DNA of 64,000 nucleotides. Source: Octopus bimaculoides (taxonomy: Eukaryota). Position 1 is the stretch's first letter, and each line of letters opens with the position of its first letter. The stretch covers positions 146,936,460 to 147,000,459 of the forward strand of contig NC_068981.1 in NCBI RefSeq assembly GCF_001194135.2, given 5' to 3'. Below, piece after piece: positions 32,204 through 54,301 of the stretch. The notes beneath the pieces were generated by a model. That model did no database searches, was not told the DNA's origin, and saw nothing but the letters and a program-made list of their open reading frames with translations. Made by a program: the position numbers and the translations under genes.

Positions 32204-32363
32204 TTAACTGTGTCCCGATTCTTTCTCAGCGAATTTTGTAAGTTCGTGTATTTCTCTCCCCAACATTTTTGTGACATGCATTGCTTGTTTTACTTCATCA
32301 CCACCAATCTGTTGCAAAGCCACTTCTGCAGCCGTTCGAACATCAGCAATGACATCATTTCGC
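32204..32363 (-). CDS. TIR/HEAT gene terminal exon: RNDVIADVRTAAEVALQQIGGDEVKQAMHVTKMLGREIHELTKFAEKESGHS*
   Basis: TTTTCAG acceptor; phase 2 completes the TGG codon. Holds the last HEAT repeat and then TAA. Confidence 0.86.
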
Positions 32364-33517
32364 CTGAAAATAAATAAATAAAACCTTATACTTTCAAAGC
32401 ATTGAAACAATTTTAAATCTTTTATTGTTTCAGTCATTATACTGAGGTCATTCTGGGAGGGTTTTAGTCAAACAAACCAATCCTAGTACTTAAGTACTGG
32501 TTGGCCTGGAAATATAGTAGAAGAGATATGCCCAAAGTGCTACACTGTAGGATTGAACCCACAATGTGGATGCAAAATGATCTCCTTAACCACATCCAAT
32601 CCTGTACCTGAATTTTTTTTATTAAATTTGAACTAGGAAAACCAGAAATCAATAATGGCATAATTTTGAAAAATTCAATTACTTAGCAACAGCTCTGTAT
32701 AAGCATTGATTGAGAGGATAAAAAAAATTACAGGTGAACTAGGAGGCAGCAGAGAAACGAAGAAATTTGATTTCGTACACCTAGCAAATATTAGAAATAA
32801 AAATTCTGGACTCATGAAAATGAGTGATTTTACAGAATTGAATAGGTAGAGGCATGCTAAAAAGTTTGCCTCTCAACCATGTGGTTGCTAGTACAGTACA
32901 GCTGATTAGCACCTTGGGCAAGTGTCTTCTACTATAACCCCAGGCTGATCAAAGCCTTGTGAGTGGATCTGGTAGATAGAAAGCGAAAGAAGTCTATTAT
33001 GTAAATGTGTGTCTCCTTGCCTTCACATCATGTAAACAGTGCCTTCTGCCTTGAAAACATGTCTGGTCATCAGAAAATATTACCACACTTGGATACAGGG
33101 CATCTGGCTATAGAAGATCTATCTCAACAGATACCACCTGACCCATGCATACATGGAAAAGTAGACATTAAAACGATGATGAATAGAAAAATGCTTTAGC
33201 ACTAACATTAAATTATTCTATAATCAGTTTTCAGATAAAGCTAAAAAACATCTCAATTATAGAAGTAATAAAAATATTATTTACTTCTTTCAGTTTCTGT
33301 TTACCAAATCTCCTCACAAGGGTTTACTTAGCCTGGGGCTACAGTAGAATACACTTGCCCAAAGTGACATGCTTCAGGACCGAACCCAAGGCCACATGAT
33401 AGGGAAGTAAGCTTCTTAACCACACAGCCATGCTTATATAGTTTAAAAAGCTAAAAAACGTTTTTTTTTAAGTCAAGAAAACCAAGAATAGTAATTTGAA
33501 TAAAATATAAAAGTTAC

Positions 33518-33758
33518 CATAATTCTAATAGAGTAGGTACAGCTTTGTGTGCTTGTGAACGTCCAAGTGCCAAACATCCAGCTTCTCTCACTAAACGATC
33601 TTTGTCTTCAAGAACATCTATTAATGCTTGAATTGTTATATCATCATTAGCACCAGTCTGGGCAAGACAAATGGCTGCAACAGTACGAACATTCGGTTCT
33701 TCATCGTTCGATACTAAGTAGATTAAAGCATCAACAACTTCTCGGCTTTTGAATTTAC
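33518..33758 (-). CDS. TIR/HEAT gene exon: KFKSREVVDALIYLVSNDEEPNVRTVAAICLAQTGANDDITIQALIDVLEDKDRLVREAGCLALGRSQAHKAVPTLLEL(W), HEAT repeats
   Basis: TAAAG acceptor and GTAAC donor, 241 bp. Repeated L..D.D..VR..A..ALG pattern of HEAT_2/PBS-lyase-type repeats. Confidence 0.88.
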
Positions 33759-35192
33759 CTTTAAAATAGAAGAAAAAACAAACAAAACTTAAAATACAAT
33801 CAAGGTTTAGAACAGATGAAATCAAGTGTAGTTGTTGGTAAACCCAAATGCACCTATTTCTACCATCTTAAACAGAATAAAAACAATATCAGAATATCAT
33901 TAATTCTTAAATTAATGAATACAGTTTTCTACAAATATCTTAACCCTATATCTTCATTACCAAACTTTTGGTATTTGCATTGTATTTAGCCAATATCAAA
34001 CAGTTCGGAATTAATCTAAGAGACTTTTAAATTTTAAATACATCTTGGCCTTCATATTCTTTATTAGATCTGTGCTAACTAATTGATTTTTTTATGCCTA
34101 ATCAGTGAAGGAATGATAGTGTTTATGAACTTTTGGCAGGGCACCTAAAACTGGTCATCCTCAAACTGGAGAGTTTTTATCTTTTGTCTCAGTAAAAGGA
34201 AAAAAAAAAACAAAAAAAAAAAGGCAGCAGCTATGACCTTTTTACGGGACTTAAAGAGAAAGGTGAAGATTAAATAGGAAGAAATCATGACTACAGAGAG
34301 GTCCTGCAGTAGGGAGCAGCACATCAAGATATAGTTATCCTTGACCAGAGATCAGGTCCAAATACTTGTGAAGTTTAACACTATCCAAGAACAATCCATC
34401 CACTGTTTTTGTCTAGCCACTTTCTCCTCTCACAATGCAAAGCTATGGGTAGAAGTCCCTTCTTTGAGATGTCACATAATGGGAATGAATCCAAATCACA
34501 TTATTGTAAAACCATGTCTGCAACCATGACATAAGAATTTATCAATTTGCAAGACGTTATCCAGTCAACAAACATTTCTTCACAGCTGTGTGGTTATGGA
34601 GTGTGCTTTGTAACCATATGGTTTTGGGTCCTGTCTTGCTGCAAGGCCCTTTAGGAAAAAGTGTCTTATAATATAATCTCAGATTAACCAATGTCTTGTG
34701 AGTGAAATTGCTAAACAGATATTATGTGGAAGCCTTTTGTATACATTGTATAGCTATGTGTGTCTAAACATTTACTTTCTGTGTCTTTGCATGATGCTAG
34801 CTTAACGATTTCGACACGCCAAGACTAGTGGGGAAAAAAGTACCATATTTGAGTAAGAATTGGTGATAGGAATGGCATCTGGCCATAGTCTTGTTCTGTC
34901 CATGCCAGCATGGAAAGAATGGATGTAAAACTGACAATTACACATTTTCCATGCAACATGATCTTTAACACATCGATACAGTCAACAAGTATGAAGTAAT
35001 CTTGTTTATAATCAGTGAATTGTACCTACTCATGTGTTTTCTCACAGCTAAGTGAACTAAACTGTTGAAAATGAAGTGCATTTAAGAAACTATAGCTATA
35101 GGACTCAATATGCTTTAGAAATATAAAGAAAAATTAGTAAAACAGTTTGGTTTGCTGTAAAGGAGAGTAACCAGAGCAGAAAATTTACTTAC

Positions 35193-35324
35193 TAAGATTT
35201 TCAATGGCTTCTACGCGGACATGAGAATTTATGTTAAACACTTCTTTCATAGCATAACTTTCCCTTGCCTGCTCTTCTATCCTTTGCCACAAACATGAAA
35301 TTATTCCATCCACAGTGCAAAATT
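35193..35324 (-). CDS. TIR/HEAT gene exon: FCTVDGIISCLWQRIEEQARESYAMKEVFNINSHVRVEAIENL(S)
   Basis: ATCAG acceptor and GTAAGT donor, 132 bp, phases consistent. The VRxxAI signature starts the HEAT region. Confidence 0.82.
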
Positions 35325-36430
35325 CTGATTTAAAAAAATACAAATAAAGAAATACAGTGATGATTACAAAACTATTTCATTGAAAGTTAGTTAACAATAG
35401 AAAATAAAACAAAAAATTTGTAATTAACTTTTGATATTAATCAATGCCTTTGGCTTTTTGAAATAAAGCTGCCTGTTTTGAATTGTTCATTGTTGAGGAA
35501 TGTTACAGCCAACTGAATGTCAGTATATAACTGGTACTTGATTTATTGACCAATATCCCTGCCAGCAGAGATACAGGTCAACAACTCAATGTAAATGGAA
35601 GAATAAAAACTAATGCATTTAGTCAGGTTGTTTCTGTCTCAGTTACCATCACTCTTTCACTAATGTAATACTACATTACACTGGTTGAAGGCTACAAATT
35701 CTTAAGGTTGCAGAATAGTGGACTGAATAGATACAAGTATTGTATCAATTCAATTGATATTTATTTTATTATTGAAGAGGGGTGAAACACAGGATGTAGA
35801 GGAACAAGACATTTGGTCTATCATTGCCATTTCTGTTACTCCACCATATGATGAAGAATCTTAGAGTGATCTATAAAAGTTAATATTTCTTTTTCATTAG
35901 TTATTTCTTACACAGCTCCAGTCAAACAGAACAATAAACAAAAGTGTTTAAACCATAACAATTCCATCTAACATTTAAGAAGTGCAAATCATCAAAGTCT
36001 CTTTTTTAAGACAGAAAGATGTAGTTTAATGAAGATTTGGTTGCTATTTCTAACAAATCCAGCAACCATGTAACATTTTTATGTTCATTCATGAGTAGAT
36101 TAAGCTAGTGTTTGAAACACAACTGAACAGAATAGTCATTGCACAAAGATGGGAGATTTATAATCAAATAACCCTTATGAGAACATTAGATAATGCAGTC
36201 CTACATATTTCATTAAAATTACAAGATCCACTGCTGGAATTTCCTTCTGGAAATCAAAACCAAGATCTTGGGAATCAGGACTTCCTATCTGCATTAACCC
36301 CAGAATACTAAATGAGATGCAGCCCCTTTCTGACTGCTACTTAATATAAAAAAGTCTGAAAAAAAAAAACTGATTTCTTGCTCATGTAGTTTCTTTCCTT
36401 CACTTCTTAACAAATCAAGTTTGAACTCAC

Positions 36431-36570
36431 CAATAAATTTATCTCGTTTAAGACACCCATCACGAGTTATATGCATCTCCCACCGGAGGATAGATTTCAG
36501 CCAGTTTTGATCATCAGGAGTGTAAGCGCTAAACAAGCCTTTATAATCACAGGTCAAATCATACCAAAAT
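36431..36570 (-). CDS. TIR/HEAT gene exon: FWYDLTCDYKGLFSAYTPDDQNWLKSILRWEMHITRDGCLKRDKFI(E)
   Basis: TGCAG acceptor and GTGAGT donor, 140 bp, phases consistent. Confidence 0.82.
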
Positions 36571-36789
36571 CTGCATTGGAAATACAAAATGAATTATAAA
36601 TTGGAAGAATTAACCTATCACAGTTTCATTTACCTGTCTCACAAAACAATGCAGTGAAACATCTAGCAGATTTAACTGAGAGTTGAAAGTTTAAATATGT
36701 TATAAGCAAACAAATTGTTGACAGGGTAAGATGATTGGAGATATATTACAAAACCATCCAACCCAACTGAAAATCAGGTTGTCACAACA

Positions 36790-37058
36790 AGTGTTTCAGT
36801 TGATCCGATCAATGGAACAGCCAGTTTGTGAAATCACAGGTGGACCCTTAACATAGTTTTCAGATAGATTCAGCGTGACACAAAGTGACAAAGCTAGCCC
36901 TTTGAACTACAGATACAGCTCATTTTTGCCAACCGAGTGGGCTGGAGCAATGAGAACTATAAAATGTCCTGCTCAAAGACAACACAATATACTGCCAGGA
37001 ATCAAACTCATGACCTTACAACCATGAGCCAAATACCCCAGCCACTAAGCCATGCACC
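36790..37058 (-). mobile_element. tRNA-derived SINE with a different body but the family C tail
   Basis: Head TGGCTTAGTGG..GAGTTTGATTCC, then TTGTGTTGTCTTTGAGCAGGACA, then the shared tail. Confidence 0.62.
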
Positions 37059-37159
37059 ATGGTGAAATGTGTTTATCTAAGAAGTAGACTGATTTTTAAA
37101 GTAATGCCATTTAAAAATATAAACACATAGAAAACATATTAAACTAATAAAGAATATAA

Positions 37160-38030: not shown

Positions 38031-38409
38031 TAATAAATCTCTTCACAAAATTATTTAGCACACTATACTGCAACACTGGATTTAATGACAGTTACCAATC
38101 TAAATTATCACCATCATTGTTTTATATCTACTTTTCCATGCTGGCATAGGTTGGACAAGTTTTCTGAGGTAGATTTTATGGTTGGATGCCTTAACTAGTT
38201 TAGCTGCCTCTTACAACACAAAAATGAGGAATATCTTGGATATACATGAAAATGGTGTTGACAAATAAAAATTCAAATTTGAGGAAACCAGTGGTGATCT
38301 TTCCAACAAAGAAATTTACTTGTAATATCAGGGTTCTTGTCTCCCCATGCCATACAAACATTCAAATTTGTGAATTCTACTTAATATTATTAGTGCAACG
38401 CTTGAATAA

Positions 38410-38620: not shown

Positions 38621-38651
38621 ACACTAAAGTAATATTCCAAAAATAACTTAC

Positions 38652-38775
38652 TGATTCCAGTCTATTTGGTTTTCTGTATATTTTCTGTCCCAATAATCAA
38701 TAGGAGTTTCAAGGTTTTGTTTGCTGTAAATCTTAGTTGATCGTTGTTGCCTCTTCGATTCAGCATTCTGCTTGT
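38652..38775 (-). CDS. TIR/HEAT gene exon: (N)KQNAESKRQQRSTKIYSKQNLETPIDYWDRKYTENQIDWN(Q)
   Basis: TGTAG acceptor after a pyrimidine tract and GTAAGT donor, 124 bp, phases consistent. Confidence 0.82.
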
Positions 38776-40297: not shown

Positions 40298-40344
40298 ATT
40301 TGATNNNNNNNNNNNNNNNNNNNNNNNNNNNNNNNNNNNNNNNN

Positions 40345-40560: not shown

Positions 40561-40673
40561 TGTTAATAGCATTTAATACAGCTTTTATGTCCTTCAAAAG
40601 TTCATTCATGGTTTCTGGATACCTCTCCTTATCAAGAAATTTATACCACTGCATACCTGCCAGCTTCAGTCTC
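40561..40673 (-). CDS. TIR/HEAT gene exon: RLKLAGMQWYKFLDKERYPETMNELLKDIKAVLNAIN (end of TIR)
   Basis: TTCATAG acceptor and GTAAGT donor, 113 bp, phase 2 in and phase 1 out, matching both neighbours. Confidence 0.82.
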
Positions 40674-41316: not shown

Positions 41317-41462
41317 ATCCCAGTATCCATAGACGAAAGGAGATTTTCATCTGAAGAAATGCTAACAGGGAAAATGCTTTTGTTTGAAATATATGCCAAG
41401 GATAATTCATCTTTACAGAATTTGGAATGAATGGAAGTTTCGCTGACAATAGATATGAACAC
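41317..41462 (-). CDS. TIR/HEAT gene exon: VFISIVSETSIHSKFCKDELSLAYISNKSIFPVSISSDENLLSSMDTG(M), TIR strand C/helix C/strand D
   Basis: TTACAG acceptor and GTAAGT donor, 146 bp. The S..S..S..C..EL..A....K.I.PV pattern is that of TIR_2-type domains. Confidence 0.85.
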
Positions 41463-43190
41463 CTGTAATAAATGATAAGATAGAAAAAGAAATGTAAGAA
41501 TATATTTGATTACCAAAATATGGAAAAAATTAACATTTAATAAGAATTTATCATAATTATAAAATAATGGATTTCCTACATTGACCGGAGTGTTAAAAAT
41601 TTATTGGAAAACAGTGGTATTAAATTAACCAAAGATATTTTATGGTATTTCTTCTTAGTATGGACTCTAGAGAGATAAACAGTCAAAGTTGACTCCAGCT
41701 GGATTTGAACTCAAAGTCAGATAAGTAAATACCACAATGCATTTTTTTATCCAGCACTCTAGCAATTTTGTACATCGATTTTGCCAATACCTATATTTAA
41801 CAGCTTTATATATTCTTCTACTTATTAAGATTTTGATGTCAGACAACCAAAAAATGTTTATGTAAAATGTGCAGTGTGTGTCTGTGTGTGCATGCCTAAA
41901 TCACCTGAAAGTAATGAGAGAATACATGGATTAAAAATATTAAGAAATATAAATGAAGTTGATGGTTTTGCAAAGATCAGACTATTTTTGCAACAGTGAA
42001 GCAGTAGCATCTGAGAAAACTAGTGATGTCCTGTGTTGGCAAATAATAAATGGAAAAAAATTAAGTGGTACAAGTTAGTTTGTCACGTGGAAAAGAGATC
42101 TGGCACTTCAGACAGAAAGTTTTATTAGTGCCTCAGGTTTGGCATGGTATCTACAGCTGGATGTAGAACAACCAATTTACAGAACACACAGGATGCATTA
42201 TTTCATGGCACCAGCACCACAAAAATTGTCTTGCCCTTGGCAAAACTAAAAACCCTTTACAGTGTGTACTGGGTTTTTGTATTGTTTTGTGGTAAGCACT
42301 TGTAACCGACAAGATAAAACTAGCTAAATGAGAACAGATTTGCTGCAAGAGATCTGTTATGGTAGTGGGAAGAGTTAACAGATGTGATACTTTTTAGTGG
42401 AAGAAAGGAAGAAGTAGTGTCAGGAGTTAGTGTGAAAGTGAGAGGATAAGTGGTGAGGAGGATGGGGCAATTGATGACTATATATACAAATACTTTAAAC
42501 ATTTTAATTTTCATTTTGGATGTGCTTTTTATGCTGGAAAGATCTGATCTTATGATATTATTATTTCTCTCAGTGAATGCAGAAGCTTTGTTGAAAAAAG
42601 GTCAACATTCATAAAGACACAAGGAAGCTATCCTCAAACCAGAGATTTGACTCATATACTACTTGCAACATAATGGATGCTGCCTGAGGTACCAAGTGGC
42701 CAGGTGGTAGCACTGAATAGGCAACAAATTATGACGAACAATCTATCCACGCAGTTTCCATCAAGTTAATTTCACCCACATGGCTTGAATAATCCAAGCT
42801 ATGGTAGAAGATATCATAGCTCAAAGTACTACTCGGTGAAATAACCAGGAACCAAATAATTGCTAAGCAAGTTTCATAACAACTCAGCTATGCTTGCACA
42901 AATTAATTCAACTAATTCGTTTTTTTTTCTTTAAGCTCAAATTTATATTTTTTACAACTGAATTTTATTGGACATTTTAATCCTTTTTTGTGATAGGTAA
43001 ATTAAGCAATAATGAAGGTAAATTGAGCAATAAATGTTTCATAAAATTAAAAGAGAATTGTGGAGGTGAAAAGCCAGAATAAAAGTAAATTAGTGTATAC
43101 TCTGATGTATATAATAACCTACTTTTCAAGTGATATCATTTGCAACAGCTATACAAGCACTCAAACAATAACATCACTTGTAAAAGCAAG

Positions 43191-43247: not shown

Positions 43248-43356
43248 CATTACGCACAATAAACACAATATAATAAGGCACTGAATACTATATGCTGCAA
43301 CAAAGCACCATGATCATGCACATGCAAGAAAATGTATATGTGCATATAAAGTAGAG

Positions 43357-43458
43357 TATGCATATGCATGAAAAGGAGTATGCATATGCATGAAAATGAG
43401 TATGCATATGCATGAAAAGGAGTATACATATGCATGAAAAGGAGTATACATATGCAGG
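43357..43458. repeat. 22 bp minisatellite (TATGCATATGCATGAAAAGGAG)n
   Basis: About 4.5 consecutive units visible. Confidence 0.85.
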
Positions 43459-43914
43459 AGACTGTATATATGCATGTGTGTGGTTGTGCATATAAAAATA
43501 GGTGCATGTATAGAGAATATGTGCACAAATGAAAGGTGTCTGATGGAGTGTGTGAGTGTGTATGTATGTGAGTGTGTATGCATGTGAGTGTGTATGTATG
43601 TGAGTGTGTATGCATGTGCATATTCATAGAAAAGAGAGCACTACTATTTACATAGCTGTACATTTAAGTAATTTACTCTTATAAGAAATACTGTTACACT
43701 TCATAAACAACATTTTGTTAAATGGAATGACTGGCCAAAATAGCTACTGACCTTGAAATCAGTTGTCCTAAAAACCCATCCTTGAATGTTTACTTAGACA
43801 ACTATGTATGCAATAACAAACATTTATCTTTTTACACATTTTAAATTAAGAGAGGTAATTTGAAGCAAGAAAAATTAACTTTCATGTAGCTTCTGCACTG
43901 CCCTTAATGCTTAC

Positions 43915-44154: not shown

Positions 44155-45013
44155 NNNNNNNNNNNNNNNNNNNNNNNNNNNNNNNNNNNNNNNNNNNNNN
44201 NNNNNNNNNNNNNNNNNNNNNNNNNNNNNNNNNNNNNNNNNNNNNNNNNNNNNNNNNNNNNNNNNNNNNNNNNNNNNNNNNNNNNNNNNNNNNNNNNNNN
44301 NNNNNNNNNNNNNNNNNNNNNNNNNNNNNNNNNNNNNNNNNNNNNNNNNNNNNNNNNNNNNNNNNNNNNNNNNNNNNNNNNNNNNNNNNNNNNNNNNNNN
44401 NNNNNNNNNNNNNNNNNNNNNNNNNNNNNNNNNNNNNNNNNNNNNNNNNNNNNNNNNNNNNNNNNNNNNNNNNNNNNNNNNNNNNNNNNNNNNNNNNNNN
44501 NNNNNNNNNNNNNNNNNNNNNNNNNNNNNNNNNNNNNNNNNNNNNNNNNNNNNNNNNNNNNNNNNNNNNNNNNNNNNNNNNNNNNNNNNNNNNNNNNNNN
44601 NNNNNNNNNNNNNNNNNNNNNNNNNNNNNNNNNNNNNNNNNNNNNNNNNNNNNNNNNNNNNNNNNNNNNNNNNNNNNNNNNNNNNNNNNNNNNNNNNNNN
44701 NNNNNNNNNNNNNNNNNNNNNNNNNNNNNNNNNNNNNNNNNNNNNNNNNNNNNNNNNNNNNNNNNNNNNNNNNNNNNNNNNNNNNNNNNNNNNNNNNNNN
44801 NNNNNNNNNNNNNNNNNNNNNNNNNNNNNNNNNNNNNNNNNNNNNNNNNNNNNNNNNNNNNNNNNNNNNNNNNNNNNNNNNNNNNNNNNNNNNNNNNNNN
44901 NNNNNNNNNNNNNNNNNNNNNNNNNNNNNNNNNNNNNNNNNNNNNNNNNNNNNNNNNNNNNNNNNNNNNNNNNNNNNNNNNNNNNNNNNNNNNNNNNNNN
45001 NNNNNNNNNNNNN
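44155..45013. other. Assembly gap (N run) inside the TIR/HEAT gene
   Basis: N run flanked by (AT)n; edges approximate by a base or two. Confidence 0.97.
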
Positions 45014-45048: not shown

Positions 45049-45074
45049 ATGTATATATATATATATATATATAT

Positions 45075-45481
45075 AAGAATGAGATAAAGAGACCAATGGC
45101 ATAAGTAAATTTATACACAATCCTACACACATTTTCCACTCACTTCAGGCTGTCCTTTAAGTAAATAACGCACAGAGTAAACTGGATACGAGATGATATA
45201 TATCCACAAATGCAACTATAATTATCATTGGAAAATACCCACACGGATTCTATACATGGATATTTATTGTTGGAATGGAACTATACTCCAAGTACTTTTT
45301 CTTCTCCGCATCGCTCTCATTTCTTACTGCAAATCTCCTCATACAGATGTAATAATCCTTATCTTCTACTATTACCGTCTCTCAGATGAAGTGATACATT
45401 GAATTTTCCCTGAAACAGCTGTAAGACATTCTACATAAAATATAAATTTACTTATGCCATTGGTCTCTTTATCTCATTCTT
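45075..45481. mobile_element. ~400 bp element bounded by a ~40 bp inverted repeat; probable Penelope-like relic
   Basis: AAGAATGAGATAAAGAGACCAATGGCATAAGTAAATTTATA and its reverse complement at 45441-45481. Inside is a degenerate hammerhead ending GAAACAGCTGTAAGAC. Confidence 0.65.
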
Positions 45482-45630
45482 TTTTATATACACACACACG
45501 CTAATACACGACCCATGTTATATTCCCCATTCATGTTGCAACCACATCTGGGGCAAAACTAGTCGGTATACATCACTTACTCGGTATTACCTGTATCATT
45601 AGGGTCTGGTTGACTCCATTACACTTCATA

Positions 45631-45676
<46 letters not shown>

Positions 45677-46420: not shown

Positions 46421-48054
46421 GTCATATTTTTGCAGGTTAAAACTATTGCCAGCAACATTTAAAGCAATCTGCATGTTCTTCATTGTGAATATTTAGTTAG
46501 ACGCAGAAAATTCTAGGACATTCTAATCTAAATCATTGTAATTTATTTTCCACCTAATTACAATATTCATAGTATCAAGCCACCCTTCTTCATTAATATC
46601 ACTGCAACACTAATGCAATTACAGTATGCCACTGCATACCAACGAAGAAGCCGCTCTGTTGCTGTCCAACCTGCTAGAAATAGCAACCAAATCTCCATAG
46701 ACTACTGTCATTAAAAAAAAAACCCACAAAAAGGAAGGAAGAACAAATTGTATACCAAGATCCTAGATAAATCTTGCCCTGAAAGAGGAATGGGATAATG
46801 GTTGTAGCTTCTTGATCAAGGACTTGAATTCATGAGGGCAGATGGGTTAGACAACATCACCTGTAGCCACCGGTACTAATGATTACAGCTCTCATAAGCC
46901 AAGATATTAACTTCCATATAGTTGCTAGACTTGAACTTAGTGAATGTGACTGCTGGGTTTCTCTTGAGTTGCACCCTTCTATCTTAAATGGCAAGTGGAA
47001 ACGTTCAGTTTTACATCTGTTTTTCCATGCTAGCATGGGTCAGATCATCAGGTTACTGAAGCATTGTTTTTCAGCTAGATGCCTTTCCTAGCCCTAACCT
47101 TCAACTGTGAGAGATCTCTTATTCCACACTTCAAAGACATGAAGAGTGAACAGACAATTTATTAACAGAAGTACAAACAATACTATTCAAATATCATGAG
47201 TTTCTAATATTCAAGCAAAGTTCTAAATATACAGACACATACATGCACATACATAAATGCTAGGGTTTCAGACCTCACATCTCTGATTGCTCTATTGATG
47301 TTGGCCCAGGACTATAGCAGAAAACACTTGCTCAACAACATACCATGCAGTGGAAGAGAACTTAATTACACATCCATGCTGCCCACATCTATCTTGTGAA
47401 GGCTGAAAGGGGAAAAGCAGACAAAAGGGAATATCTAAAGAAATTAAAATGGTTTTAAGCATTTTAAACTTGCCCAACACAATTACACAGACAGAAAACT
47501 ATACAAATGCAAATCTTCTGTTGTCTTAATAGAGAGAGAAGGATCAAAAAACATTTTTCTTTTTTCAGCAGAGATGGTATTTGTTATTTGAGAACCATTA
47601 CATTATTGAATATAGCATGAGATAGATCATGTACTGTTCTGACAGTTTCAAAGTTACACTGGTCTCCTTCCATATTACTAATGCATAAAGTCTCTACCTT
47701 TCAAGCTACAAATCACCAGGATTACCAGTTTCATGATGAGAAATTCTAGAATATGGCATTTATGTTCTTCAGTTTCTTTTTGAATTTGTTCTCAAAACAG
47801 ACACAAACCGATTAGGAAAGAGCTGTTGGCATTCAGTATTTCCTTGTGCATGATAAGCTTAAGTATTTTAAACATATCATATATGCATATAGACATAGTT
47901 GACTCATTTGAACAGGCATGTGATGAGAAAGCCTTCACTTCCTTGTTTGCTCAAGATGATAGCAATATTTCTAATCATGTCACTCAAATTATCACATACA
48001 AGGAACACAAAATTCACAGAAGTAATGGTTTTCACTCAAAGAGAAGTCATTAAA

Positions 48055-48870
48055 TTTACAAATAAATGCATGAAATTTTGATACAATATAGATACAATAA
48101 TGGAAATTAATATGCACCAGTCAAATTTTGCAACATCAGTACATCACATATGAAAAATGACATCGCTTAAATGGCAGCCATTTTCAGCTTCGCACACCCG
48201 TACTCTTTCCAAAACTTGCACCATAACACCCTCAAGAGTTTCAGACCCCACTTCTCTGATTTCTCTATTGATGTTCTCCATCAGTTGCACCAGGGTCTCA
48301 GGGTTTTTGATGTAAACCCTCTCTTTCAGGTATCCCCACAAGAAAAAAATCCAAGCTAGTCAAGTGAGAGTAACATGAAGGCCAGTTGAAATTGCTGTAG
48401 CAGATTATTCTCTCTCCAAAGCATTGCCATAACAACTGCATTCTCTTGCAGTATGAGCAGTTGTCCCATCTTGCTGGAACCATGTGGGAGGTCTACTTTA
48501 AATGGCCTTCACGTTACCCAGACTCGACTAGCTTGGATTTTTTTCTTGTGGGGATACCTGAAAGAGAGAGTTTATGTCAACAAACTGGAGATCCTGGTGC
48601 AACTGAAGGAGAACATCAATAGAGAAATCAGAGAAGTGGGGTCTGAAATTCTTGGGGGTGTTATGGTGCAAGTTTTGGAAAGAGCACAAGTGTGTGAAGC
48701 CGAAAATGGCTGCCATTTAAGTGATGTAGTGGTGTTACAAAATTTGACTTGTGCATATTAATTTCCATTATGTCTTTTATATTGTATCAAAAAATTTCAT
48801 GCATTTATTTGTAAAGTTACGGAAATTATAATAAATTGAAATCCATCAGTGAATTTTGGGACATCTTGTA
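48055..48870. mobile_element. Tc1-like transposase 3' end duplicated in inverted orientation (fold-back)
   Basis: DFFLWGYLKERVY..P.TL.QL.ENINREI..CEAENG.HL reads on both strands. The right arm ends in a TIR-like GAATTTTGGGACATCTTGTA. Confidence 0.85.
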
Positions 48871-49789
48871 TCTGCACAGAAAGCAAGTCACAACATCCAT
48901 ATACAAAAGAATCATGCCATTCACACAGAAAAGACAAATAAATTATGTGAAGTCTTAGTTTGGATGCATTGAATTTGATTTCCCCCCACTTGTTTAATAA
49001 CTAGGTTGTACTGATAACTACATTAGATAAACTTCATAAAAGGTTACAACTCCTTGTTATTTGCCAGTCTAAAGCTGTCCACTCCAATACTCTTATCCTA
49101 TTTCACAGTGACTGGCAAAAAGTTTATTGCAGCAACATAGTAACATCTGGCCTATAACACATTGGAATTTCAAATCAGTTGACCTTATATAGTAGCTACA
49201 AAAATGTTCACATTTTGCTATAAAACAAGCATACAGCAAGTACACTGCTTCTACCAGAGACTAATTAATCCTACCCTATTAACTTAATACTCCAAGTATT
49301 ATATTTATAGCAATGAGCTAAACAATAAAATGAAATGCAGTTACTATTGCGTAACACAAGTAACTGTAGTTGTTTCAGTTTATATTTTTATATTTCCAGT
49401 CATTTCAGTAATGCAATAAGTGAGATACCAGCTCAAAAAGGTCTCAAGTTCAAAATCTTTTATGGATATTTTCATTGTGTACTGAAATCCACATGCTTAA
49501 ATTCTACATACCTCATATGATTTTAGGTTCTAAACTAGAGCCGAACACTTACCCTAAAAAATCCTCTTAAGGAATGCGAGTCAACTATACCAATAAATAA
49601 AATTCATTTGACTGCCAGTCCTCAGTCAAACCGTCCAACCCATGCCAGCATGGAAAGTGGATGTTAAACAATGATGATGATGATACCGTTAAGTAAAATG
49701 TAAATGTAGAACCAGACAAAGAATGGGAAATTATAGTTTAACCTATAATTACATATGTGTACAACAAAGCCATAAACAAAGATAGATGC

Positions 49790-50120
49790 AAATGTGGTTG
49801 TGTGGTAAGAAGCTTGCTTCACAACTACATGGTTCTGGGTTCAGTCGCAGAGCTCCTTGAGCAAGTCTTCTATTATAGCCCCGAGGCCGACCAAAGCCCT
49901 ATGAGTGGATCTGGTACATAGAAACTGAAATAGGCCCATTATGTATGTGTGTGTGTGTGTGTGTCCATCACTGCTTGACAACCAGTGCTGATGTGTTTAC
50001 ATCCCTGTAACTTAGCAATTCGACAAAAGAGACTGATAGATAGGCTTAACAAAAAACAAGTACTGGAGTTGATTTATGACTAAATTTTTTCAGGGCAGTG
50101 CCCCAGTATAGCCACAGTCA
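49790..50120 (+). mobile_element. SINE family A
   Basis: Same family, diverged. Confidence 0.78.
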
Positions 50121-50359
50121 TGCATCTTATTTCTGTTTGTTGTAAGGATTTCATTTTGTACAGCTTTCTAGTAAATATTACAGTGGAATTGAACCAAAAC
50201 TACAGAATACAATACTTGTGAGTTTAATAACTCCCTATACCCCTGCTGCTGCTAAGCACTGACAGGGAAGCCTCCAATGACTTGACATGCTAGAAACAAC
50301 AGTGAAATAAAGAGAAAAAATTGCCTAAAATAGTTTGGCAAGACTTCCGCCCATCCCCA

Positions 50360-50680
50360 CCCCCAAGACATGGGACGAGGTGGTGAAGCATGGTCTTCTG
50401 ATGTTGGGTCTCACGTAAGAGATGACAAATGATCGAGACCTTTCGCGGTTTGCTGTGCTTGAAGAAACTCAACAGGTCAAATGAAATCGTAGCTGTGGAC
50501 AGTGCCAGTGACACGTAAAATGCACCCAATACACTCTCAGAGTGGTTGGTGTTGGAAAGGGCATCCAGCTATAGAAACCAAGCCAAAATCAGACTGGAGC
50601 CTGGTACAGCCGTCCGGCTTACCAGTTCCAGTCATACCGTCTAACCCATGTCAGCATGGAAAACGGACGCTAAATGATGA
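50360..50680 (+). mobile_element. RTE-type LINE 3' fragment
   Basis: KTWDEVVKH..MTNDRDL and the shared 3' UTR ending GGAAAACGGACGCTAAATGATGA. Confidence 0.78.
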
Positions 50681-51572
50681 CATCTACACATTTCAACCTT
50701 ATCAAGTGTGTTATTAGTGCATGTGTACATATTACCAGATTGTATTTGAACAACTTTTTCTAAACTAAATGCAAGAGCGTTCTTATCCACTAAGCCATTG
50801 ACACATGTGCACCCTCTATCATAGGTGAGGTGTCAGCTGAATGGTTACACACATAATCACATAGGTTTGTCTCGTGATAAGCTGCACATAACAGAACCCG
50901 AGTAGCGATGGAATGTTAATCATCAGCTTCCAAAAAATACTAATAAACACCACTATATACATAAAGTACTCTTCCTATTGTTCGAGTGCTTTCATATAAC
51001 ACGCGGACCCACACATGCACTATTGTACAAAAACAAACCTACAGGTATATATATGCATGATTCATCCATTCATTAAACTATCTTTTAAAACGGAAAACAA
51101 ACAATCCGCTTCACTAAATATACAATTTAGCCATACTGTGACGAGTACTGAAAATTAAAAATTGTTACAACATAAGTTATATCTCTGTAAACCAAAAAAG
51201 GGATCAATGTGGTTAGTTTCAGGCTTTGTTAAATCTTCAGAGAAAAATTTTCCCCATCATCTGTCGCTTTTAGCAACTTATATTCAATACAGCTTTGCTT
51301 ATTTCTCAGTGAGGCCGTAAACAAACAAACAAAAGTTATCCAAGAAAAATGTGTCGTGTAGCACACATATGCAAAAGCATGCTTATACATGTACAAAACA
51401 CACATTAGCCTAATTACGGCGAGACAGCTGGTAAATTGTATGATAAAATTGTTTTCTTTTGACAAGAGTAAAAGATTTCGAATATCCCAGAGTTTAAGCT
51501 CCGTAACAAAATTTTCAGGATGGAAAATAAAGTTGGTCGATTCCTTTCACATGAAAAACAAACATATCTTAT

Positions 51573-51960
51573 AGGCGGAGGGGTGGCTGTGTGGTAAGTA
51601 GCTTGCTTACCAACCACATGGCTCCGAGTTCAGTCCCACTGCGTGACACCTTGGGCAAGTGTCTTCTACTATAGCCACGGGCCGATCAAAGCCCTGCGAG
51701 TGGATTTGGTAGACGGAAACTGAAAGAAGCCCGTCGTATATATGTATGTGTGTTTATGTTTGTGTGTCTGTGTTTGTCCCCCGCCCAACATTACTTGACA
51801 ACCGACGCTGGTGTATTTACGTCCCCGTAAACTAGCGGTTCGGCAAAAGAGACCGACAGAATAAGCACTAGACTTCCAAATAAGTCCTGAGGTCGATTTG
51901 TTCGACTAAAGGCGGTGCACCAGCATGGCCACAGTCAAATGACTGAAACAAGTAAAAGAG
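51573..51960 (+). mobile_element. SINE family A, full length with CpGs intact
   Basis: Same sequence as 11401-11775. Confidence 0.85.
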
Positions 51961-52164
51961 TATACCTTGTTTAAAAAAGTTACGAGGAAACGATGGACCG
52001 GGGGAATGCATGCATAAAAGAACTAATCGAATTAGCTTGCATTTTGAAAACGTTTTGTTTTGGAGCGTAAAATTCCGGAATACACAATATCTCTTTTTGC
52101 GATAAGAGGTAACAAGTAAGAAAACAAGAAAAATGTACTAGTATGGTGATTCCATATTTAGAAG

Positions 52165-52515
52165 TAGGCGTGGTTGTGTGGTGAGAAGCTTGCTTTCCAA
52201 CCACATGGTTCCGGGTTCAGTCCCATTGCGTGACACCTTGAGGCTACTATAGCCTCAGGCCGACCAAAGCCTTGTAAGTGGATTTGGTAGACAGAAATTG
52301 AAAGAAGCCCGTCGTATATATGTGTGTATGTCTTTGTTCTCCACCACCACCGCTTGACAACCGGTGTTGGTGTATTTACCTCCGCGTAACTTAGTGGTTC
52401 GGCAAAAAAATATCGGTACCAGGCCCAGGCCTAACTCCTGGGTTCGATTTGTTCGATTAAAACTCAAGGCGGTGGTGCAGCATAGCCGCAGTCAAATGAC
52501 TGAAACAAGATAAAA
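52165..52515 (+). mobile_element. SINE family A
   Basis: Same family with a small internal deletion. Confidence 0.8.
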
Positions 52516-54159
52516 GGTTTAATAGGCCTTAAAACATCAAGTATATTTGCAAAACCTGTTTCATCATAGCTAAGAACATGCTACAATAACAAGAAAAAAA
52601 AAGAGAAAGAAAAAACTGGTGAGGGGATAAGAGAAAATAGAAAGAGTGGGGAGAAAGTGGTTGTGATAAGACATTTAGAAATTAAATACACCGCATAGAA
52701 GAAAAAACGAGGGAGGGAGAAAGGAAGTATACAAAAAAAAGGATGAGAGGGAAAATTACACAAATCGTTTAGAAAGAAAGATTGTGAAAGAAGAAAGATA
52801 AAGAAAAAAAATAGTGAAATGATTTTCCTCACCATACAAAAAGTTGAATGAGTTTTATCAATTCAAGCTACTCCTCTAATAGTTGATTTTTTTTTTCAAC
52901 CCATAAAAGCTAGAAACTTACTATTACTACTACTAATATTTAGCACAGCTACTATTGTTAACTACTTAAAAATAATAAACATCCCATGTAAAAGAGTGAA
53001 GGTAGAGAGAGATAGACAGAAGGAAAAAAATCATAAGAGATCGAAAAACAGAGGTGGGAAGTGTGCGAGCATGTTCGTGTTTTACGTATGAAATTTCCAG
53101 TTGCTAAAGAATTTAAGCTTTGTCCTTAAGACTTTTGAAAGTATATCCCTGGTACATTTTTTCTAAGGCACTAAATCAACTGCCTGTAAAGGGTTATAAG
53201 GAGCGAAGATAGATCACAATTGATCTATCTACCAGAAAAATTTAGACAAAAAATACAAGACGAAGTTTCGGAAGAAGTGGCAAAAACGAAAACTAATGAT
53301 TGTCATTTTTTTTTTAATTATTATTGTGTTTCATACAACGGAACTTACTATCCTGACCCCCACCTCCACTATTATATTTTTCATTTTTGTCCCATCCCTA
53401 TTCATTCAGTAACCGGTGGAATTCTGCTTCAAGCACGCCATATAACCCATCATAACTTTATTTTTAGAAAATTTTTGCGAATTTGTATTCCTTTCCCAGG
53501 AGGCATGGGGTTCCTAATCAAAATCCGCCAAACAGAGCAATCACCAACAGTGTTCCAGCATGTTCTTGGTTGTAGTGACTAAACTGAACTAAAACAACTG
53601 GCTGCATAAATCGAAGTCTGTCTGAATGAGTACACATGCGTTATTACTTAAGGGCAACAGTTGGTTGAAAAGCTGTCAGTTTGTGTTCGGAAGTCGGCTC
53701 AGACATTTCGACTCAATTCGATTAACCTACCCACTCGTAAATACAAATTGCTGATGTAAGCATTAATAGTATCGTAAACATTTACTTATTTCCTATCCAA
53801 ATGACTGAAGGGTTCATATGATCGCACGAGCGAATAATAATAACCAAATCACCTTAAAATCATTTCGTACCATTTTAATCTCTATTAAAGCTGGAAGACC
53901 ATCTGAGAGTAAGTTTGCTCGATAATAGTTAACCTGGAACTATACAACATCATTTTCTTCCTTCACTCAGAGACGAAAAAGGACAAGGGCTGAAATATTA
54001 AATTGTATACCCCTCACAGCAAAACAACTTAAACTCCGATAGAAAACAACTGACTGTAACCAGTGATTGAAGTCGTCTCTTGGGAACTGCTAATTAGAAT
54101 TGCAATAGAAGATACAAAAAGATGTGCTACAAAATCAATGGAAATAATAATATACTAAC

Positions 54160-54301
54160 CTTTTAAGTATAGCATAAAATCCTTGTTGCTGTGGCTGTAA
54201 CTTATCATTAAATCACGGCTGACTGGACGTATTGTAATTGGAGGGTGTTGATGTTTTTCTCTTCTGTACACAGGAGGACAACGGGATATTTTATGTCCCA
54301 T
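54160..54301 (-). CDS. TIR/HEAT gene, first coding exon found: MGHKISRCPPVYRREKHQHPPITIRPVSRDLMISYSHSNKDFMLYLK
   Basis: TTTAG acceptor immediately before the ATG, GTTAGT donor, open frame of 142 bp. DLMISYSH matches TIR box 1 (strand A). Linkage to the downstream exons is inferred across a missing exon. Confidence 0.75.

What the first reader, a model, noticed from the sequence alone, without database searches (positions are those of the whole stretch)
32204..54301. Unnamed gene with an unusual architecture: MGxxxS N-terminus, TIR domain, EF-hand-like middle, HEAT repeats
Seen: eight GT-AG exons; the seven from 41462 to 32204 chain with perfectly consistent phases (2,1,2,1,1,2) and no stops, giving 1198 coding nt found, so a little over 400 aa with the missing exon. 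Known: animal TIR proteins are typically receptors (TLR, IL-1R) or adaptors (MyD88 with a death domain, SARM1 with ARM-SAM-SAM-TIR, TRAM and TIRAP as near TIR-only). An N-terminal TIR_2-like domain followed by PBS-lyase-like HEAT repeats fits none of these. Inference: this could be an uncharacterised invertebrate intracellular immune or NAD-signalling protein in which the HEAT solenoid is the sensor or autoinhibitory module, a reversed analogue of SARM1. I cannot tell whether homologues are already annotated.
Basis: partly seen in the sequence, partly recalled or inferred. Interest (0 to 1): 0.82.

Follow-up and report, generated by a model that had tools for sequence, protein, structure and literature searches.

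The report
Conserved octopus TIR–HEAT signalling gene
This is a real, already catalogued but never studied octopus gene for a TIR "immune-signalling" domain fused to an EF-hand-like module and HEAT repeats; the family goes back to the single-celled relatives of animals, and one exon is hidden in an assembly gap that has spoiled every public model of the gene.

Summary
On the minus strand I reproduced eight GT-AG exons (54301-54160, then seven from 41462 to 32204), phases 2,1,2,1,1,2, with 1198 coding nt. The window is Octopus bimaculoides and the gene is LOC106868728.

- **Missing exon:** it is 104 nt (35 aa, the middle of the TIR domain). Comparison with O. vulgaris and O. sinensis places it in the 859-N gap at 44155-45013.
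- **Second gap:** 40305-40344 is intronic and its flanks are collinear.
- **Public models:** all three O. bimaculoides models lack the true first exon and carry false N-termini taken from intron sequence.
- **Architecture:** MGHKIS N-terminus, TIR_2 domain, EF-hand-like pair without calcium ligands, and PBS-type HEAT-like repeats.
- **Conservation:** dN/dS is 0.18 against O. vulgaris. Homologues occur in molluscs, annelids, echinoderms, hemichordates, amphioxus, tunicates, acoels, Trichoplax, a sponge and a choanoflagellate, all labelled "uncharacterised".

My best mechanism is inferred, not shown. I propose a lipid-anchored, SARM1-class TIR protein whose self-association, and probably NAD+ cleavage, is controlled by the C-terminal module. 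A non-enzymatic adaptor role is nearly as likely.

The parts
54160..54301 (-). Coding exon 1 (142 nt): MGHKISRCPPVYRREKHQHPPITIRPVSRDLMISYSHSNKDFMLYLK plus 1 nt. It holds the N-terminal Met-Gly motif and the first TIR strand (DLMISYSH).
   Evidence: The ATG follows an AG acceptor and the donor is GTTAGT. It is 96% identical in protein and 97% in DNA to O. vulgaris exon 1. It is missing from all three public O. bimaculoides models.
44155..45013 (.). Assembly gap (859 N) that most probably hides coding exon 2 (104 nt, about 35 aa): TIR helix A, strand B and the BB loop.
   Evidence: The phases require a 3n+2 exon. The O. vulgaris and O. sinensis exon 2 is not found anywhere in the window. Its flanks map to both gap edges, which are (TA)n runs.
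41317..41462 (-). Coding exon 3 (146 nt): VFISIVSETSIHSKFCKDELSLAYISNKSIFPVSISSDENLLSSMDTG. It carries the [YF]-C-x-D-E-L motif with the Glu aligned to SARM1 E642.
   Evidence: Splice sites. The alignment to SARM1 and Cat1 is, and the Glu is conserved in 44 of 48 members.
40561..40673 (-). Coding exon 4 (113 nt): end of the TIR domain, including the long last helix.
   Evidence: In the AlphaFold model helix 146-169 is confident.
40305..40344 (.). Assembly gap (40 N) inside the intron between coding exons 4 and 5. It is flanked by poly-T and TG/TA microsatellites and has no coding consequence.
   Evidence: The flanks are collinear with O. vulgaris (L002 55300-55751 and 56121-58000), and the orthologue has no exon in this interval.
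38652..38775 (-). Coding exon 5 (124 nt): disordered basic linker and the start of the EF-hand-like module (PIDYWDRKYTENQIDWN).
Evidence: pLDDT is below 50 for residues 178-185.
36431..36570 (-). Coding exon 6 (140 nt): core of the EF-hand-like pair.
   Evidence: A weak Cbl EF-hand-like match appears. The loops lack calcium ligands.
35193..35324 (-). Coding exon 7 (132 nt): end of the EF-hand-like module, a connecting helix and the first HEAT-like repeat (VRVEAIENLS).
33518..33758 (-). Coding exon 8 (241 nt): HEAT-like repeats of the PBS-lyase / alphaRep type.
   Evidence: Pfam HEAT_2 8e-19 on the window-encoded protein. The alphaRep profile match is 2e-56, with Foldseek identity of 34-35%.
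32204..32363 (-). Coding exon 9 (157 nt plus the TAA stop): last HEAT-like repeat and the C-terminal helix.
   Evidence: The tail is three residues longer than in O. vulgaris.

Best explanation
**What it is (shown).** The locus is the Octopus bimaculoides gene LOC106868728, orthologue of O. vulgaris/O. sinensis LOC115211707. It has nine coding exons over about 22 kb on the minus strand. Exon 2 is hidden in the 859-N gap. The predicted product is 433 aa.

**Architecture (shown).**
- Met-Gly N-terminus followed by a short basic tail.
- TIR domain of the TIR_2 (SARM1/bacterial) type, roughly residues 30-170.
- Disordered linker.
- A pair of EF-hand-like motifs without calcium ligands, roughly residues 187-260.
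- Four to five PBS-lyase-type HEAT-like repeats, roughly residues 268-429.

The gene belongs to an old, slowly evolving, low-copy family found from a choanoflagellate and a sponge to amphioxus. No member has been studied.

**How it most likely works (inferred).**
1. The start at Met-Gly gives an N-myristoylated protein that sits on a membrane. An alternative upstream start would give a soluble isoform.
2. The EF-like/HEAT module binds a conserved partner or ligand and controls whether the TIR domains can self-associate.
3. Once associated, the TIR domains signal. In bilaterian members that keep the catalytic Glu, the signal is most probably NAD+ cleavage, possibly producing a nucleotide messenger.

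This would be analogous to SARM1, with the regulatory solenoid on the other side of the TIR. It is not a SARM1 family member.
For: **Gene identity and integrity.**
- The exon chain totals 1198 nt.
- The downstream seven exons match the public O. bimaculoides proteins exactly.
- Exons align end to end to O. vulgaris, with dN/dS 0.18.
- Synteny places exon 2 in the gap.

**One transcript.** Twenty intron-free contigs of 1.9-3 kb, including contigs from three different sequencing runs, carry the whole TIR-to-HEAT reading frame of a 62%-identical cephalopod homologue.

**Domains.**
- Pfam TIR_2 scores 73 bits against a cut-off of 28, and HEAT_2 scores 68 bits against 27.7.
- The AlphaFold model has mean pLDDT 85.
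- Foldseek matches the SARM1 TIR at TM 0.68-0.80 and alphaRep at 34-35% identity.

**TIR class.**
- Profile hits are best to the NADase TIRs Cat1 (8.6e-12), SARM1 (7e-7) and AbTIR (5e-6). TLRs follow (8.6e-6 to 4e-4), and MyD88, TIRAP and TRAM do not reach 1e-3.
- The Glu aligned to SARM1 E642 is present in 44 of 48 members.
- Equivalents of SARM1 Y568, D594, G601 and F603 are conserved. This uses the alignment, the column counts, and SARM1 numbering from my own knowledge.

**Membrane anchor.**
- MGxxx[STAGCN] is at residue 1 in 21 of 49 homologues. It follows a short upstream extension in 6 more.
- It is present in the choanoflagellate, sponge, hemichordate, amphioxus and Ciona proteins.

**Breadth.**
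Against: **Nothing about function was measured.**

**Catalysis is not universal.**
- The Glu is Asp in Salpingoeca, His in Geodia and Gln in a scallop subgroup.
- TLR-type scaffolding TIRs also keep this Glu (my knowledge), and they score only slightly worse than SARM1.

**The lipid anchor is uncertain in octopus.**
- The octopus N-terminus has His at position 3, which the PROSITE myristoylation pattern excludes.
- RefSeq isoform X1 (MRFGKLR-MG...) and a related cephalopod transcript (MNWRNFLKKTKN-MG...) have in-frame upstream starts that would bury the Gly.

**The regulatory role of the HEAT/EF module is an analogy only.** I could not inspect domain contacts in the model.

**An immune role is not implied by the evolutionary pattern.** Strong purifying selection, low copy number and retention in the very reduced orthonectid Intoshia are not what fast-evolving immune receptors usually show.

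**Exon 2 is not directly readable in this assembly.**
Confidence: 0.5

Rival explanations
1. It is a non-enzymatic TIR adaptor. A lipid-anchored scaffold, working like vertebrate TRAM, docks on the TIR domains of Toll-like or IL-1R-like receptors at a membrane. Its HEAT repeats recruit or sequester a downstream factor. No NAD+ chemistry is involved.
For: - The Met-Gly motif is more widely conserved than the catalytic Glu. It is present in the choanoflagellate and the sponge, where the Glu is Asp or His.
- TLR15/2, TLR6, TLR1 and the Hydra TRR-2 TIR are also profile or fold matches.
- The HEAT region is the best-conserved part, as expected for a fixed protein partner.
- The ecTIR-DC proteins of invertebrates have been proposed to act as adaptors or regulators (PMC6321704).
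- In amphioxus, other novel TIR adaptors act as negative regulators (PMC6043800).
Against: - The BB loop is of the SARM1 type (D-x-x-x-L-x-A-G-x-D-F) and lacks the Pro-Gly of TLR/adaptor TIRs (motif knowledge is mine).
- MyD88, TIRAP and TRAM do not appear at E 1e-3 or better.
- Pfam TIR_2 scores far better than the TLR-type TIR model, 3.6e-20 against 4.2e-08.
- Most active-site equivalents are conserved across bilaterians.
Confidence: 0.3
2. It is a housekeeping or neuronal regulator rather than an immune gene. The family would serve a conserved cell-biological task, for example local NAD+ control or membrane/cytoskeleton signalling. The TIR domain would then say nothing about defence.
For: - dN/dS is 0.18.
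- The named species looked up carry only one or a few copies each, for example one paralogue in octopus.
- Full-length identity is 31-45% from the sponge and choanoflagellate to octopus.
- The gene is retained in the reduced genome of Intoshia linei.
- SARM1 itself acts mainly in axon biology (my knowledge).
Against: No expression or phenotype data are available. This reading is compatible with either molecular mechanism above, so it competes only with the word "immune". Gills and haemocytes of bivalves express several related TIR families (PMC5549309), but not demonstrably this one.
Confidence: 0.15
3. It is an artefact or a dead gene. Either the TIR exon at 54301 belongs to a different gene from the HEAT exons, or the O. 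bimaculoides copy has lost exon 2 and is a pseudogene.
For: Exon 2 cannot be read in the window. No public O. bimaculoides model joins exon 1 to the rest. A MITE-like insertion sits next to the gap.
Against: - RefSeq models of O. vulgaris, O. sinensis and Argonauta join the same exons.
- Intron-free cephalopod contigs carry the whole reading frame.
- All remaining splice sites and frames are intact and under purifying selection.
- About 490 bp of orthologous sequence, including exon 2, is exactly what is missing between two microsatellite gap edges.
Confidence: 0.03

Closest known systems
SARM1 / TIR-1 (ARM-SAM-SAM-TIR NAD+ hydrolase)
   Same: - Both have a TIR of the TIR_2 class, with profile E 7e-7 and fold TM 0.68-0.80.
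- The BB-loop pattern is the same, and the Glu aligned to E642 is kept in most members.
- Both have an alpha-solenoid in the same polypeptide that could act as a regulator.
- Both are intracellular.
   Different: - The domain order is reversed.
- There are no SAM domains, so there is no SAM-ring octamer.
- The solenoid is a short PBS-type HEAT-like array, not an ARM domain with an NMN/NAD+ pocket.
- An EF-hand-like module lies between the domains.
- It has an N-terminal Met-Gly motif in place of SARM1's mitochondrial targeting sequence (my knowledge).
- TIR identity is only 20-22%.
TRAM / TICAM2 (N-myristoylated TIR adaptor of vertebrates)
   Same: Both have an N-terminal Met-Gly motif followed by a short basic stretch and then a TIR domain, which suggests a membrane-tethered TIR protein.
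   Different: There is no detectable sequence relationship at E 1e-3 or better. TRAM has no EF-like or HEAT part. Its TIR is of the receptor/adaptor class.
Prokaryotic enzymatic TIRs (Cat1, AbTIR, ThsB, SPARTA TIR-APAZ)
   Same: The best sequence-profile match of the TIR is Cat1 at 8.6e-12. Domain-level hits occur to SAVED-TIR, Argonaute-associated TIR and ThsB models. The [aromatic]-C-x-D-E-L motif is shared.
   Different: All hits lie far below family cut-offs. The partner domains differ. None of the 20 additional full-length representatives that I looked up by name was bacterial.
PBS-lyase HEAT-like repeats (CpcE/CpcF, NblB, MTH187; designed alphaRep proteins)
   Same: The repeat unit is the same, about 31 residues (D..VR..AA.ALG.IG). 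The profile E-value is 2e-56 to alphaRep, identity is 34-35%, and TM reaches 0.89.
   Different: Those are stand-alone repeat proteins or lyase subunits, mainly prokaryotic. Here only four to five repeats are fused behind a TIR domain, with family-specific invariant residues (DRLVRE.GC, WRND).
Cbl tyrosine-kinase-binding domain, EF-hand part
   Same: The first EF-like motif (FW..F.....V.W..F) matches Cbl's at E 0.003-0.005. Pfam Cbl_N2 weakly hits two longer family members. Cbl-b is the best fold overlap for the middle domain, with TM 0.50.
   Different: None of these matches is significant on its own. No four-helix bundle or SH2 domain is present. The calcium ligands are not conserved.
ecTIR-DC families of invertebrates (Gerdol et al. 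2017) and the 'ARM-TIR' proteins listed for Aplysia
   Same: These are catalogues of conserved cytosolic invertebrate TIR proteins that are absent from vertebrates and have unknown function (PMC6321704, PMC9334734). This family fits that description, and an Aplysia homologue exists.
   Different: I could not read the 2017 paper, so I cannot say which numbered family this is, or whether it is one of them. Those works list architectures only.

Membership tests
TIR domain, TIR_2 type (Pfam PF13676) | Profile match above the curated cut-off | tested here: met
   The full-length orthologue P0001 scores 73.1 bits against a cut-off of 28. The window-encoded protein without exon 2 scores only 22.4 bits, because 35 residues lie in the gap.
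TIR domain, TIR_2 type (Pfam PF13676) | Flavodoxin-like alpha/beta fold superposable on solved TIR domains | tested here: met
   In the AlphaFold model pLDDT is mostly above 85 across residues 31-170. Foldseek matches SARM1 TIR at TM 0.68-0.80, Hydra TRR-2 at 0.84, and also RPS4 and Cat1.
Enzymatic (NAD+-cleaving) TIR domains | Catalytic Glu in the helix after strand C, preceded by an aromatic residue four positions before | tested here: met
   The window encodes SKFCKDELSLAY in the exon at 41462-41317. The Glu aligns with SARM1 E642 and with the Cat1 WCWDEL motif. It is Glu in 44 of 48 members and Gln in 4, but Asp in the choanoflagellate and His in the sponge. This feature is necessary, not sufficient.
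Enzymatic (NAD+-cleaving) TIR domains | Measured NAD+ hydrolase or cyclase activity | not testable with these tools
   This requires a biochemical assay.
SARM1 / TIR-1 family | ARM - SAM - SAM - TIR order, with tandem SAM domains that build the octamer | tested here: not met
   Pfam finds no SAM domain. The TIR is N-terminal and the solenoid C-terminal. It is not a member.
TRAM/TICAM2-like lipid-anchored adaptors | N-terminal Gly2 in a myristoylation context | tested here: inconclusive
   The octopus N-terminus MGHKIS has Gly2 and Ser6, but His3 is excluded by the PROSITE pattern. Nineteen of 49 homologues fit the strict pattern at residue 1 and 21 fit the loose one. Upstream in-frame starts exist in some transcripts.
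TRAM/TICAM2-like lipid-anchored adaptors | Sequence relationship of the TIR to the TICAM/MyD88 adaptor class | tested here: not met
   No MyD88, TIRAP or TICAM chain appears at E 1e-3 or better in the PDB profile search.
HEAT_2 / PBS-lyase HEAT-like repeats (PF13646, PF03130) | Profile match above cut-off and an alpha-solenoid fold | tested here: met
   On the window-encoded protein, HEAT_2 scores 68.1 bits against 27.7 and HEAT_PBS 24.6 against 20.9. The alphaRep profile match is 2e-56. Foldseek gives TM up to 0.89.
EF-hand calcium-binding domains | Paired helix-loop-helix fold | tested here: inconclusive
   The model of residues 186-292 has pLDDT 83 and shows two helix-strand-helix units. 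All 50 best Foldseek matches are EF-hand proteins, but E is 0.28 or worse and TM 0.50 or lower. Pfam finds nothing on the isolated segment.
EF-hand calcium-binding domains | Canonical 12-residue loop (D-x-D-x-D-G-x-I-x-x-x-E) | tested here: not met
   In loop 1, position 1 is R/K/D and position 12 is K/Q/E/D. In loop 2, positions 1 and 3 are mostly Glu, Asp5 occurs in 12 of 29, Gly6 in 11 of 29, and position 12 is variable. Calcium binding is unlikely.
ecTIR-DC families (Gerdol et al. 2017) | Assignment to one of the numbered families by the authors' architecture and phylogeny | not tested
   The paper is not held. The supplements of PMC6321704 do not give the assignment in text form.

The most novel reading that the evidence does not exclude
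The family is an ancestral holozoan, membrane-tethered TIR enzyme, older than animals and independent of SARM1. A HEAT/EF-like sensor would release TIR assembly on a membrane, and the TIR would turn NAD+ into a nucleotide second messenger. That would be an animal-lineage counterpart of plant and bacterial TIR signalling, lost in vertebrates and apparently in ecdysozoans.
Probability: 0.2. Interest if true: 0.75.

Novelty: new variant of a known kind. Interest (0 to 1): 0.42.

Why it matters
**For TIR biology.** Since TIR domains were found to be NAD+-cleaving enzymes, SARM1 has been, as far as I know, the only well-studied animal example. A recent survey states that several animal TIR clades remain untouched (PMC13142454). 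This family is a clean candidate for study:
- It is low-copy and strongly conserved from a choanoflagellate to amphioxus.
- Its TIR is SARM1/bacterial-like.
- It has a probable lipid anchor and a built-in repeat module.
- It is present in tractable species such as oyster, Ciona, amphioxus and Trichoplax.

Showing whether it cleaves NAD+ would tell whether enzymatic TIR signalling in animals is wider than SARM1.

**For annotation.** All public O. bimaculoides models of this gene have false N-termini caused by one assembly gap. They lose the start codon, the putative lipid-anchor motif and half of the TIR domain.

Tried and rejected
**Searches that led nowhere.**
- An exact look-up of P0001 found no contig. 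The isoform X1 protein P0065 did.
- tblastn for the missing exon across the whole window, with word size 2 and E up to 10, found nothing credible. I therefore rejected the idea that the exon is misplaced elsewhere in the window.
- Gerdol et al. 2017 is not held.
- The supplements of PMC6321704 and PMC13142454 give no usable family or clade assignment.
- Literature searches for TIR-HEAT, ARM-TIR and bbtTIRA/C returned only SARM1 work, the Aplysia catalogue and a review without architectures. I could not test whether the amphioxus adaptors bbtTIRA/C are family members.

**Analyses that gave only weak or negative results.**
- Pfam on the isolated middle segment gave no hit.
- The Foldseek result for the middle domain alone is only suggestive.
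- PADLOC and NCBIfam gave only domain-level TIR or HEAT hits far below cut-offs. I do not file the gene under any bacterial defence system.
- Pfam did not confirm my impression that the ORF fragments in intron 1 and at 14257-15134 are mariner-type transposase remnants.

**Readings considered and rejected.**
- A SARM1 orthologue: there is no SAM domain and the order is reversed.
- A Toll-like receptor fragment: Pfam finds no LRR, and I saw no transmembrane segment, though none was specifically searched for.
- A calcium sensor: the loops lack ligands.
- A chimeric gene model: single transcripts exist in relatives.

Full report
**1. The observation**

The window has 35% G+C and eight N-gaps. On the minus strand I located each exon by its open frame and splice sites.

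| Coding exon | Window coordinates | Length |
|---|---|---|
| 1 | 54301-54160 | 142 nt |
| 2 | hidden in gap 44155-45013 | 104 nt (from orthologues) |
| 3 | 41462-41317 | 146 nt |
| 4 | 40673-40561 | 113 nt |
| 5 | 38775-38652 | 124 nt |
| 6 | 36570-36431 | 140 nt |
| 7 | 35324-35193 | 132 nt |
| 8 | 33758-33518 | 241 nt |
| 9 | 32363-32204 | 160 nt, with TAA |

- Every readable exon has an AG acceptor and a GT donor.
- The seven downstream exons form one 1056-nt open frame with phases 2,1,2,1,1,2.
- With the first exon the total is 1198 nt.

**2. Whose gene it is**

- A protein search gave 64 homologues. The best is O. vulgaris/O. sinensis LOC115211707.
- Its 90% cluster also holds three Octopus bimaculoides proteins: XP_052825685.1, XP_014769611.1 and UniProt A0A0L8HT76, all for LOC106868728.
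- These three are identical to the window's downstream seven exons (coding exons 3-9), so the window is O. bimaculoides.
- Each starts with a different spurious N-terminus made from intron sequence of this window:
  - MKNMQIALNV... from about 46480, plus read-through of the acceptor at 41462.
  - MENINREIREV... from about 48280.
  - MKIKMFK from about 42514.
That exon is 96% identical to the O. vulgaris N-terminus.

**3. The gaps**

I fetched the orthologous loci of O. sinensis (L001) and O. vulgaris (L002). The window is collinear with them over the whole gene and on both sides.

*Gap 40305-40344.*
- It lies in an intron and is flanked by poly-T and TG/TA repeats.
- The orthologue has 369 bp there and no exon.

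*Gap 44155-45013.*
- Exon 1 ends in phase 1 and the 41462 exon begins in phase 0.
- The orthologues have a 104-nt exon between them, encoding DTLEKNNISVWVDTADIGAGVDFLKKIGQAIIESK. tblastn cannot find it in the window.
- In both orthologues this exon lies about 50 bp after a (TA)n run that follows ...GGTTATTAGTTGCTAAATTGTTTCT.
- The window has that same sequence and a (TA)n run at about 45690-45640. A 579-bp block absent from the relatives follows, then a second (TA)n run, then the gap.
- On the far side the window resumes with (TA)n(TG)n and rejoins the orthologous intron at ...AAGCATTAAGGGCAGTGCAG, with further unmatched sequence in between.
- About 490 bp of orthologous sequence, including exon 2, is what is missing.

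I conclude that exon 2 is in the gap. This is an inference from synteny. With it the product would be 433 aa.

**4. Is it a living gene and a single transcript?**

- Exons align to O. vulgaris without gaps at 93-98.6% identity, against about 84-89% for introns.
- Over 399 codons dS is 0.10, dN is 0.019 and dN/dS is 0.18.
- A 62%-identical cephalopod homologue (P0003) is encoded as one uninterrupted 1332-nt reading frame on 20 contigs of 1.9-3 kb, including contigs from three different sequencing runs. The genomic gene spans more than 20 kb, so these must be mRNA-derived.
- TIR and HEAT parts are therefore in one transcript in relatives.

**5. Anatomy of the protein**

*Overall model.*
- For the full-length orthologue, Pfam gives TIR_2 at 3.6e-20, TIR at 4e-8, HEAT_2 at 1e-18 and HEAT_PBS at 3e-5.
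- An AlphaFold model built on 49 homologues has mean pLDDT 85.
- It shows a disordered N-terminus (1-24), TIR (31-170), a disordered linker (178-185), a compact helical module (187-260), and a solenoid (268-429).

*HEAT-like repeats.*
- Structure search returns designed alphaRep proteins at 34-35% identity.
- The sequence profile finds alphaRep at 2e-56.

*TIR domain.*
- Structure search returns SARM1 TIR at TM 0.68-0.80, then RPS4, Cat1, SPARTA and Hydra TRR-2.
- For the TIR alone the profile finds Cat1 at 8.6e-12, SARM1 at 7e-7, bacterial TIRs and AbTIR at 2-5e-6, and TLRs at 9e-6 to 4e-4. It finds no MyD88, TIRAP or TRAM.
- The motif S-K-[YF]-C-x-D-E-L aligns its Glu with SARM1 E642 and with the Cat1 WCWDEL motif. 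The Glu is present in 44 of 48 sequences and is Gln in four scallop-group sequences.
- Equivalents of SARM1 Y568, D594, G601 and F603 are conserved (residue numbers from my knowledge of SARM1).

*Middle module.*
- Modelled alone it has pLDDT 83 and two helix-strand-helix units.
- Its 50 best structural matches are all EF-hand proteins: Cbl and Cbl-b TKB, calmodulin, troponin C, KChIP and others. E is 0.28 or worse and TM is 0.50 or lower.
- At sequence level only a Cbl EF-hand-like motif (E about 0.003-0.005) and an amoebic calcium-binding protein (E 0.007) appear.
- The calcium-ligand positions are not conserved.
- "EF-hand-like, probably not calcium-binding" is a fair description.

**6. The N-terminus**

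- The octopus protein starts MGHKISRC.
- MGxxx[STAGCN] is at residue 1 in 21 of 49 homologues and follows a short upstream extension in 6 more.
- It is present in the choanoflagellate (MGNKPT), sponge (MGGGSS), hemichordate, amphioxus and Ciona proteins.
- Conservation of an internal Met-Gly in models with longer N-termini argues that it is used as a start.

Caveats:
- His3 in octopus violates the PROSITE pattern.
- RefSeq isoform X1 (MRFGKLR-MG...) would hide the glycine. So would a related transcript whose upstream AUG is in a weaker context, C at -3, against A at -3 and G at +4 for the Met-Gly AUG.
- Two isoforms, one anchored and one soluble, are possible.

**7. Distribution**

- Named homologues come from many molluscs, Capitella, Lingula, a bryozoan, a nemertean, acoels, the orthonectid Intoshia, a sea cucumber and the hemichordate Glandiceps (named "tirA-like").
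- They also come from amphioxus (one copy mislabelled FAM65A), Ciona, Styela and Phallusia, Trichoplax, the sponge Geodia and the choanoflagellate Salpingoeca urceolata.
- Octopus has one paralogue, LOC106869059.
- In a search of 1.84 billion representatives, roughly 50 of the 150 listed hits were single matches spanning TIR to HEAT. The other listed hits were multi-TIR or long HEAT-repeat proteins.
- I saw no vertebrate, arthropod, nematode, cnidarian or bacterial full-length member among the named hits. I did not survey absence systematically.
- The catalytic Glu is Asp in the choanoflagellate and His in the sponge.

**8. What it most likely does**

*Shown:* the gene, its exons, its domains, its conservation and its breadth.

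*Inferred:*
- Lipid anchoring through the Met-Gly start.
- Control of TIR self-association by the EF-like/HEAT module, by analogy with SARM1's ARM domain.
- NAD+ cleavage as the output in members that keep the Glu.

The main rival is a non-enzymatic, TRAM-like adaptor. It gains weight from the loss of the Glu in the earliest-branching members and from the better conservation of the anchor motif and the HEAT surface. I put the enzyme reading slightly ahead, for three reasons:
- The BB loop and active-site equivalents are of the SARM1 type.
- The TIR_2 model fits far better than the receptor-type model.
- Adaptor TIRs are not detected.

Strong purifying selection, low copy number and retention in Intoshia suggest a conserved cellular role rather than an arms-race immune receptor.

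**9. Comparison with what is known**

- It is not a SARM1 family member: it has no SAM domains and the order is reversed.
- It is not a TICAM or MyD88 relative.
- It is not a member of any bacterial defence family, since only domain-level hits were found.
- Catalogues of invertebrate TIR proteins describe conserved cytosolic families of unknown function, termed ecTIR-DC (PMC6321704, PMC5549309, PMC6836662), and "ARM-TIR" proteins in Aplysia (PMC9334734).
- A 2026 survey notes several uncharacterised animal TIR clades (PMC13142454).
- I found no paper on this family's function. I could not read Gerdol et al. 2017 to see which number, if any, it carries.

**10. Verdict**

It overstates novelty, because the gene and its relatives are already in the databases across many phyla, though unstudied.

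I rate it a new variant of a known kind (a TIR signalling protein with a built-in solenoid) and of moderate interest.

Noticed in passing
window 41463-41600, 42494-42514, about 46424-46492, about 48276-48359 (minus strand): The three public O. bimaculoides protein models of this gene (XP_052825685.1, XP_014769611.1, A0A0L8HT76) begin with different spurious N-termini translated from intron sequence. One of these comes from a repeat-derived ORF. None includes the true first exon. The cause is the gap that hides exon 2.
   Followed up: yes
window 45060-45638: A 579-bp block lies between two (TA)n runs, right next to the 859-N gap. It has 50-bp inverted ends (45066-45115 against 45441-45490, 96%) and is absent from the orthologous intron of O. 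vulgaris and O. sinensis. It looks like a small MITE-type insertion, or possibly a local misassembly.
   Followed up: partly
window 48147-48360 (-) and 48453-48761 (+): Two diverged copies of the same ORF fragment (FFLWGYLKERVY...NINREIREVGSE...CEAENGCHLSDV) lie in opposite orientation in intron 1. From memory they resemble the C-terminus of a mariner/Tc1-type transposase, but Pfam gave no hit.
   Followed up: partly
window 43316-43478: A CA/TA-rich minisatellite region gives a spurious 137-aa ORF. The corresponding region of O. vulgaris and O. sinensis holds many more copies (L002 51938-52701), so the array length differs between species.
   Followed up: no
window 51571-51962, 52166-52516, 49779-50120, 11403-11777, 5763-6039: A dispersed repeat of about 350-390 bp occurs at least five times in the window. 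It also occurs at non-orthologous places in the O. vulgaris locus. It is probably a SINE-like element.
   Followed up: no
window 13946-15177: A stretch of about 1.2 kb is 82.5% identical to a non-syntenic part of the O. vulgaris locus (L002 36207-37448). It carries ORF fragments with a weak helix-turn-helix hit (HTH_32, E 0.005). It is probably a decayed DNA transposon.
   Followed up: partly
window about 24076-27941 (expected on the + strand); L001 72036-74894, L002 71819-74178: In O. sinensis and O. vulgaris the next gene downstream, on the opposite strand, encodes a 295-aa short-chain dehydrogenase (adh_short). The window is collinear with that region, so part of this gene should lie here. 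I did not map its exons.
   Followed up: no
L001 10001 (about 32 kb upstream of exon 1, outside the window); L005 123-161: RefSeq isoform X1 in O. vulgaris/O. sinensis adds MRFGKLR in front of Met-Gly. Argonauta, several gastropods and a related cephalopod transcript also have short basic or aromatic extensions ending just before a conserved Met-Gly. This suggests alternative starts that switch the putative lipid anchor on or off.
   Followed up: partly
proteins P0030, P0032, P0036, P0046 (scallop group); P0080; P0237: A scallop-lineage subgroup has Gln in place of the catalytic Glu, and SY(E/D) in place of SYSH. The choanoflagellate has Asp and the sponge has His at the Glu position. Catalytic competence may have been gained or lost within the family.
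   Followed up: partly
protein P0069 (Branchiostoma lanceolatum CAH1232801.1): An amphioxus member of this family is labelled 'FAM65A' in its source record. This looks like a wrong name transfer.
   Followed up: no
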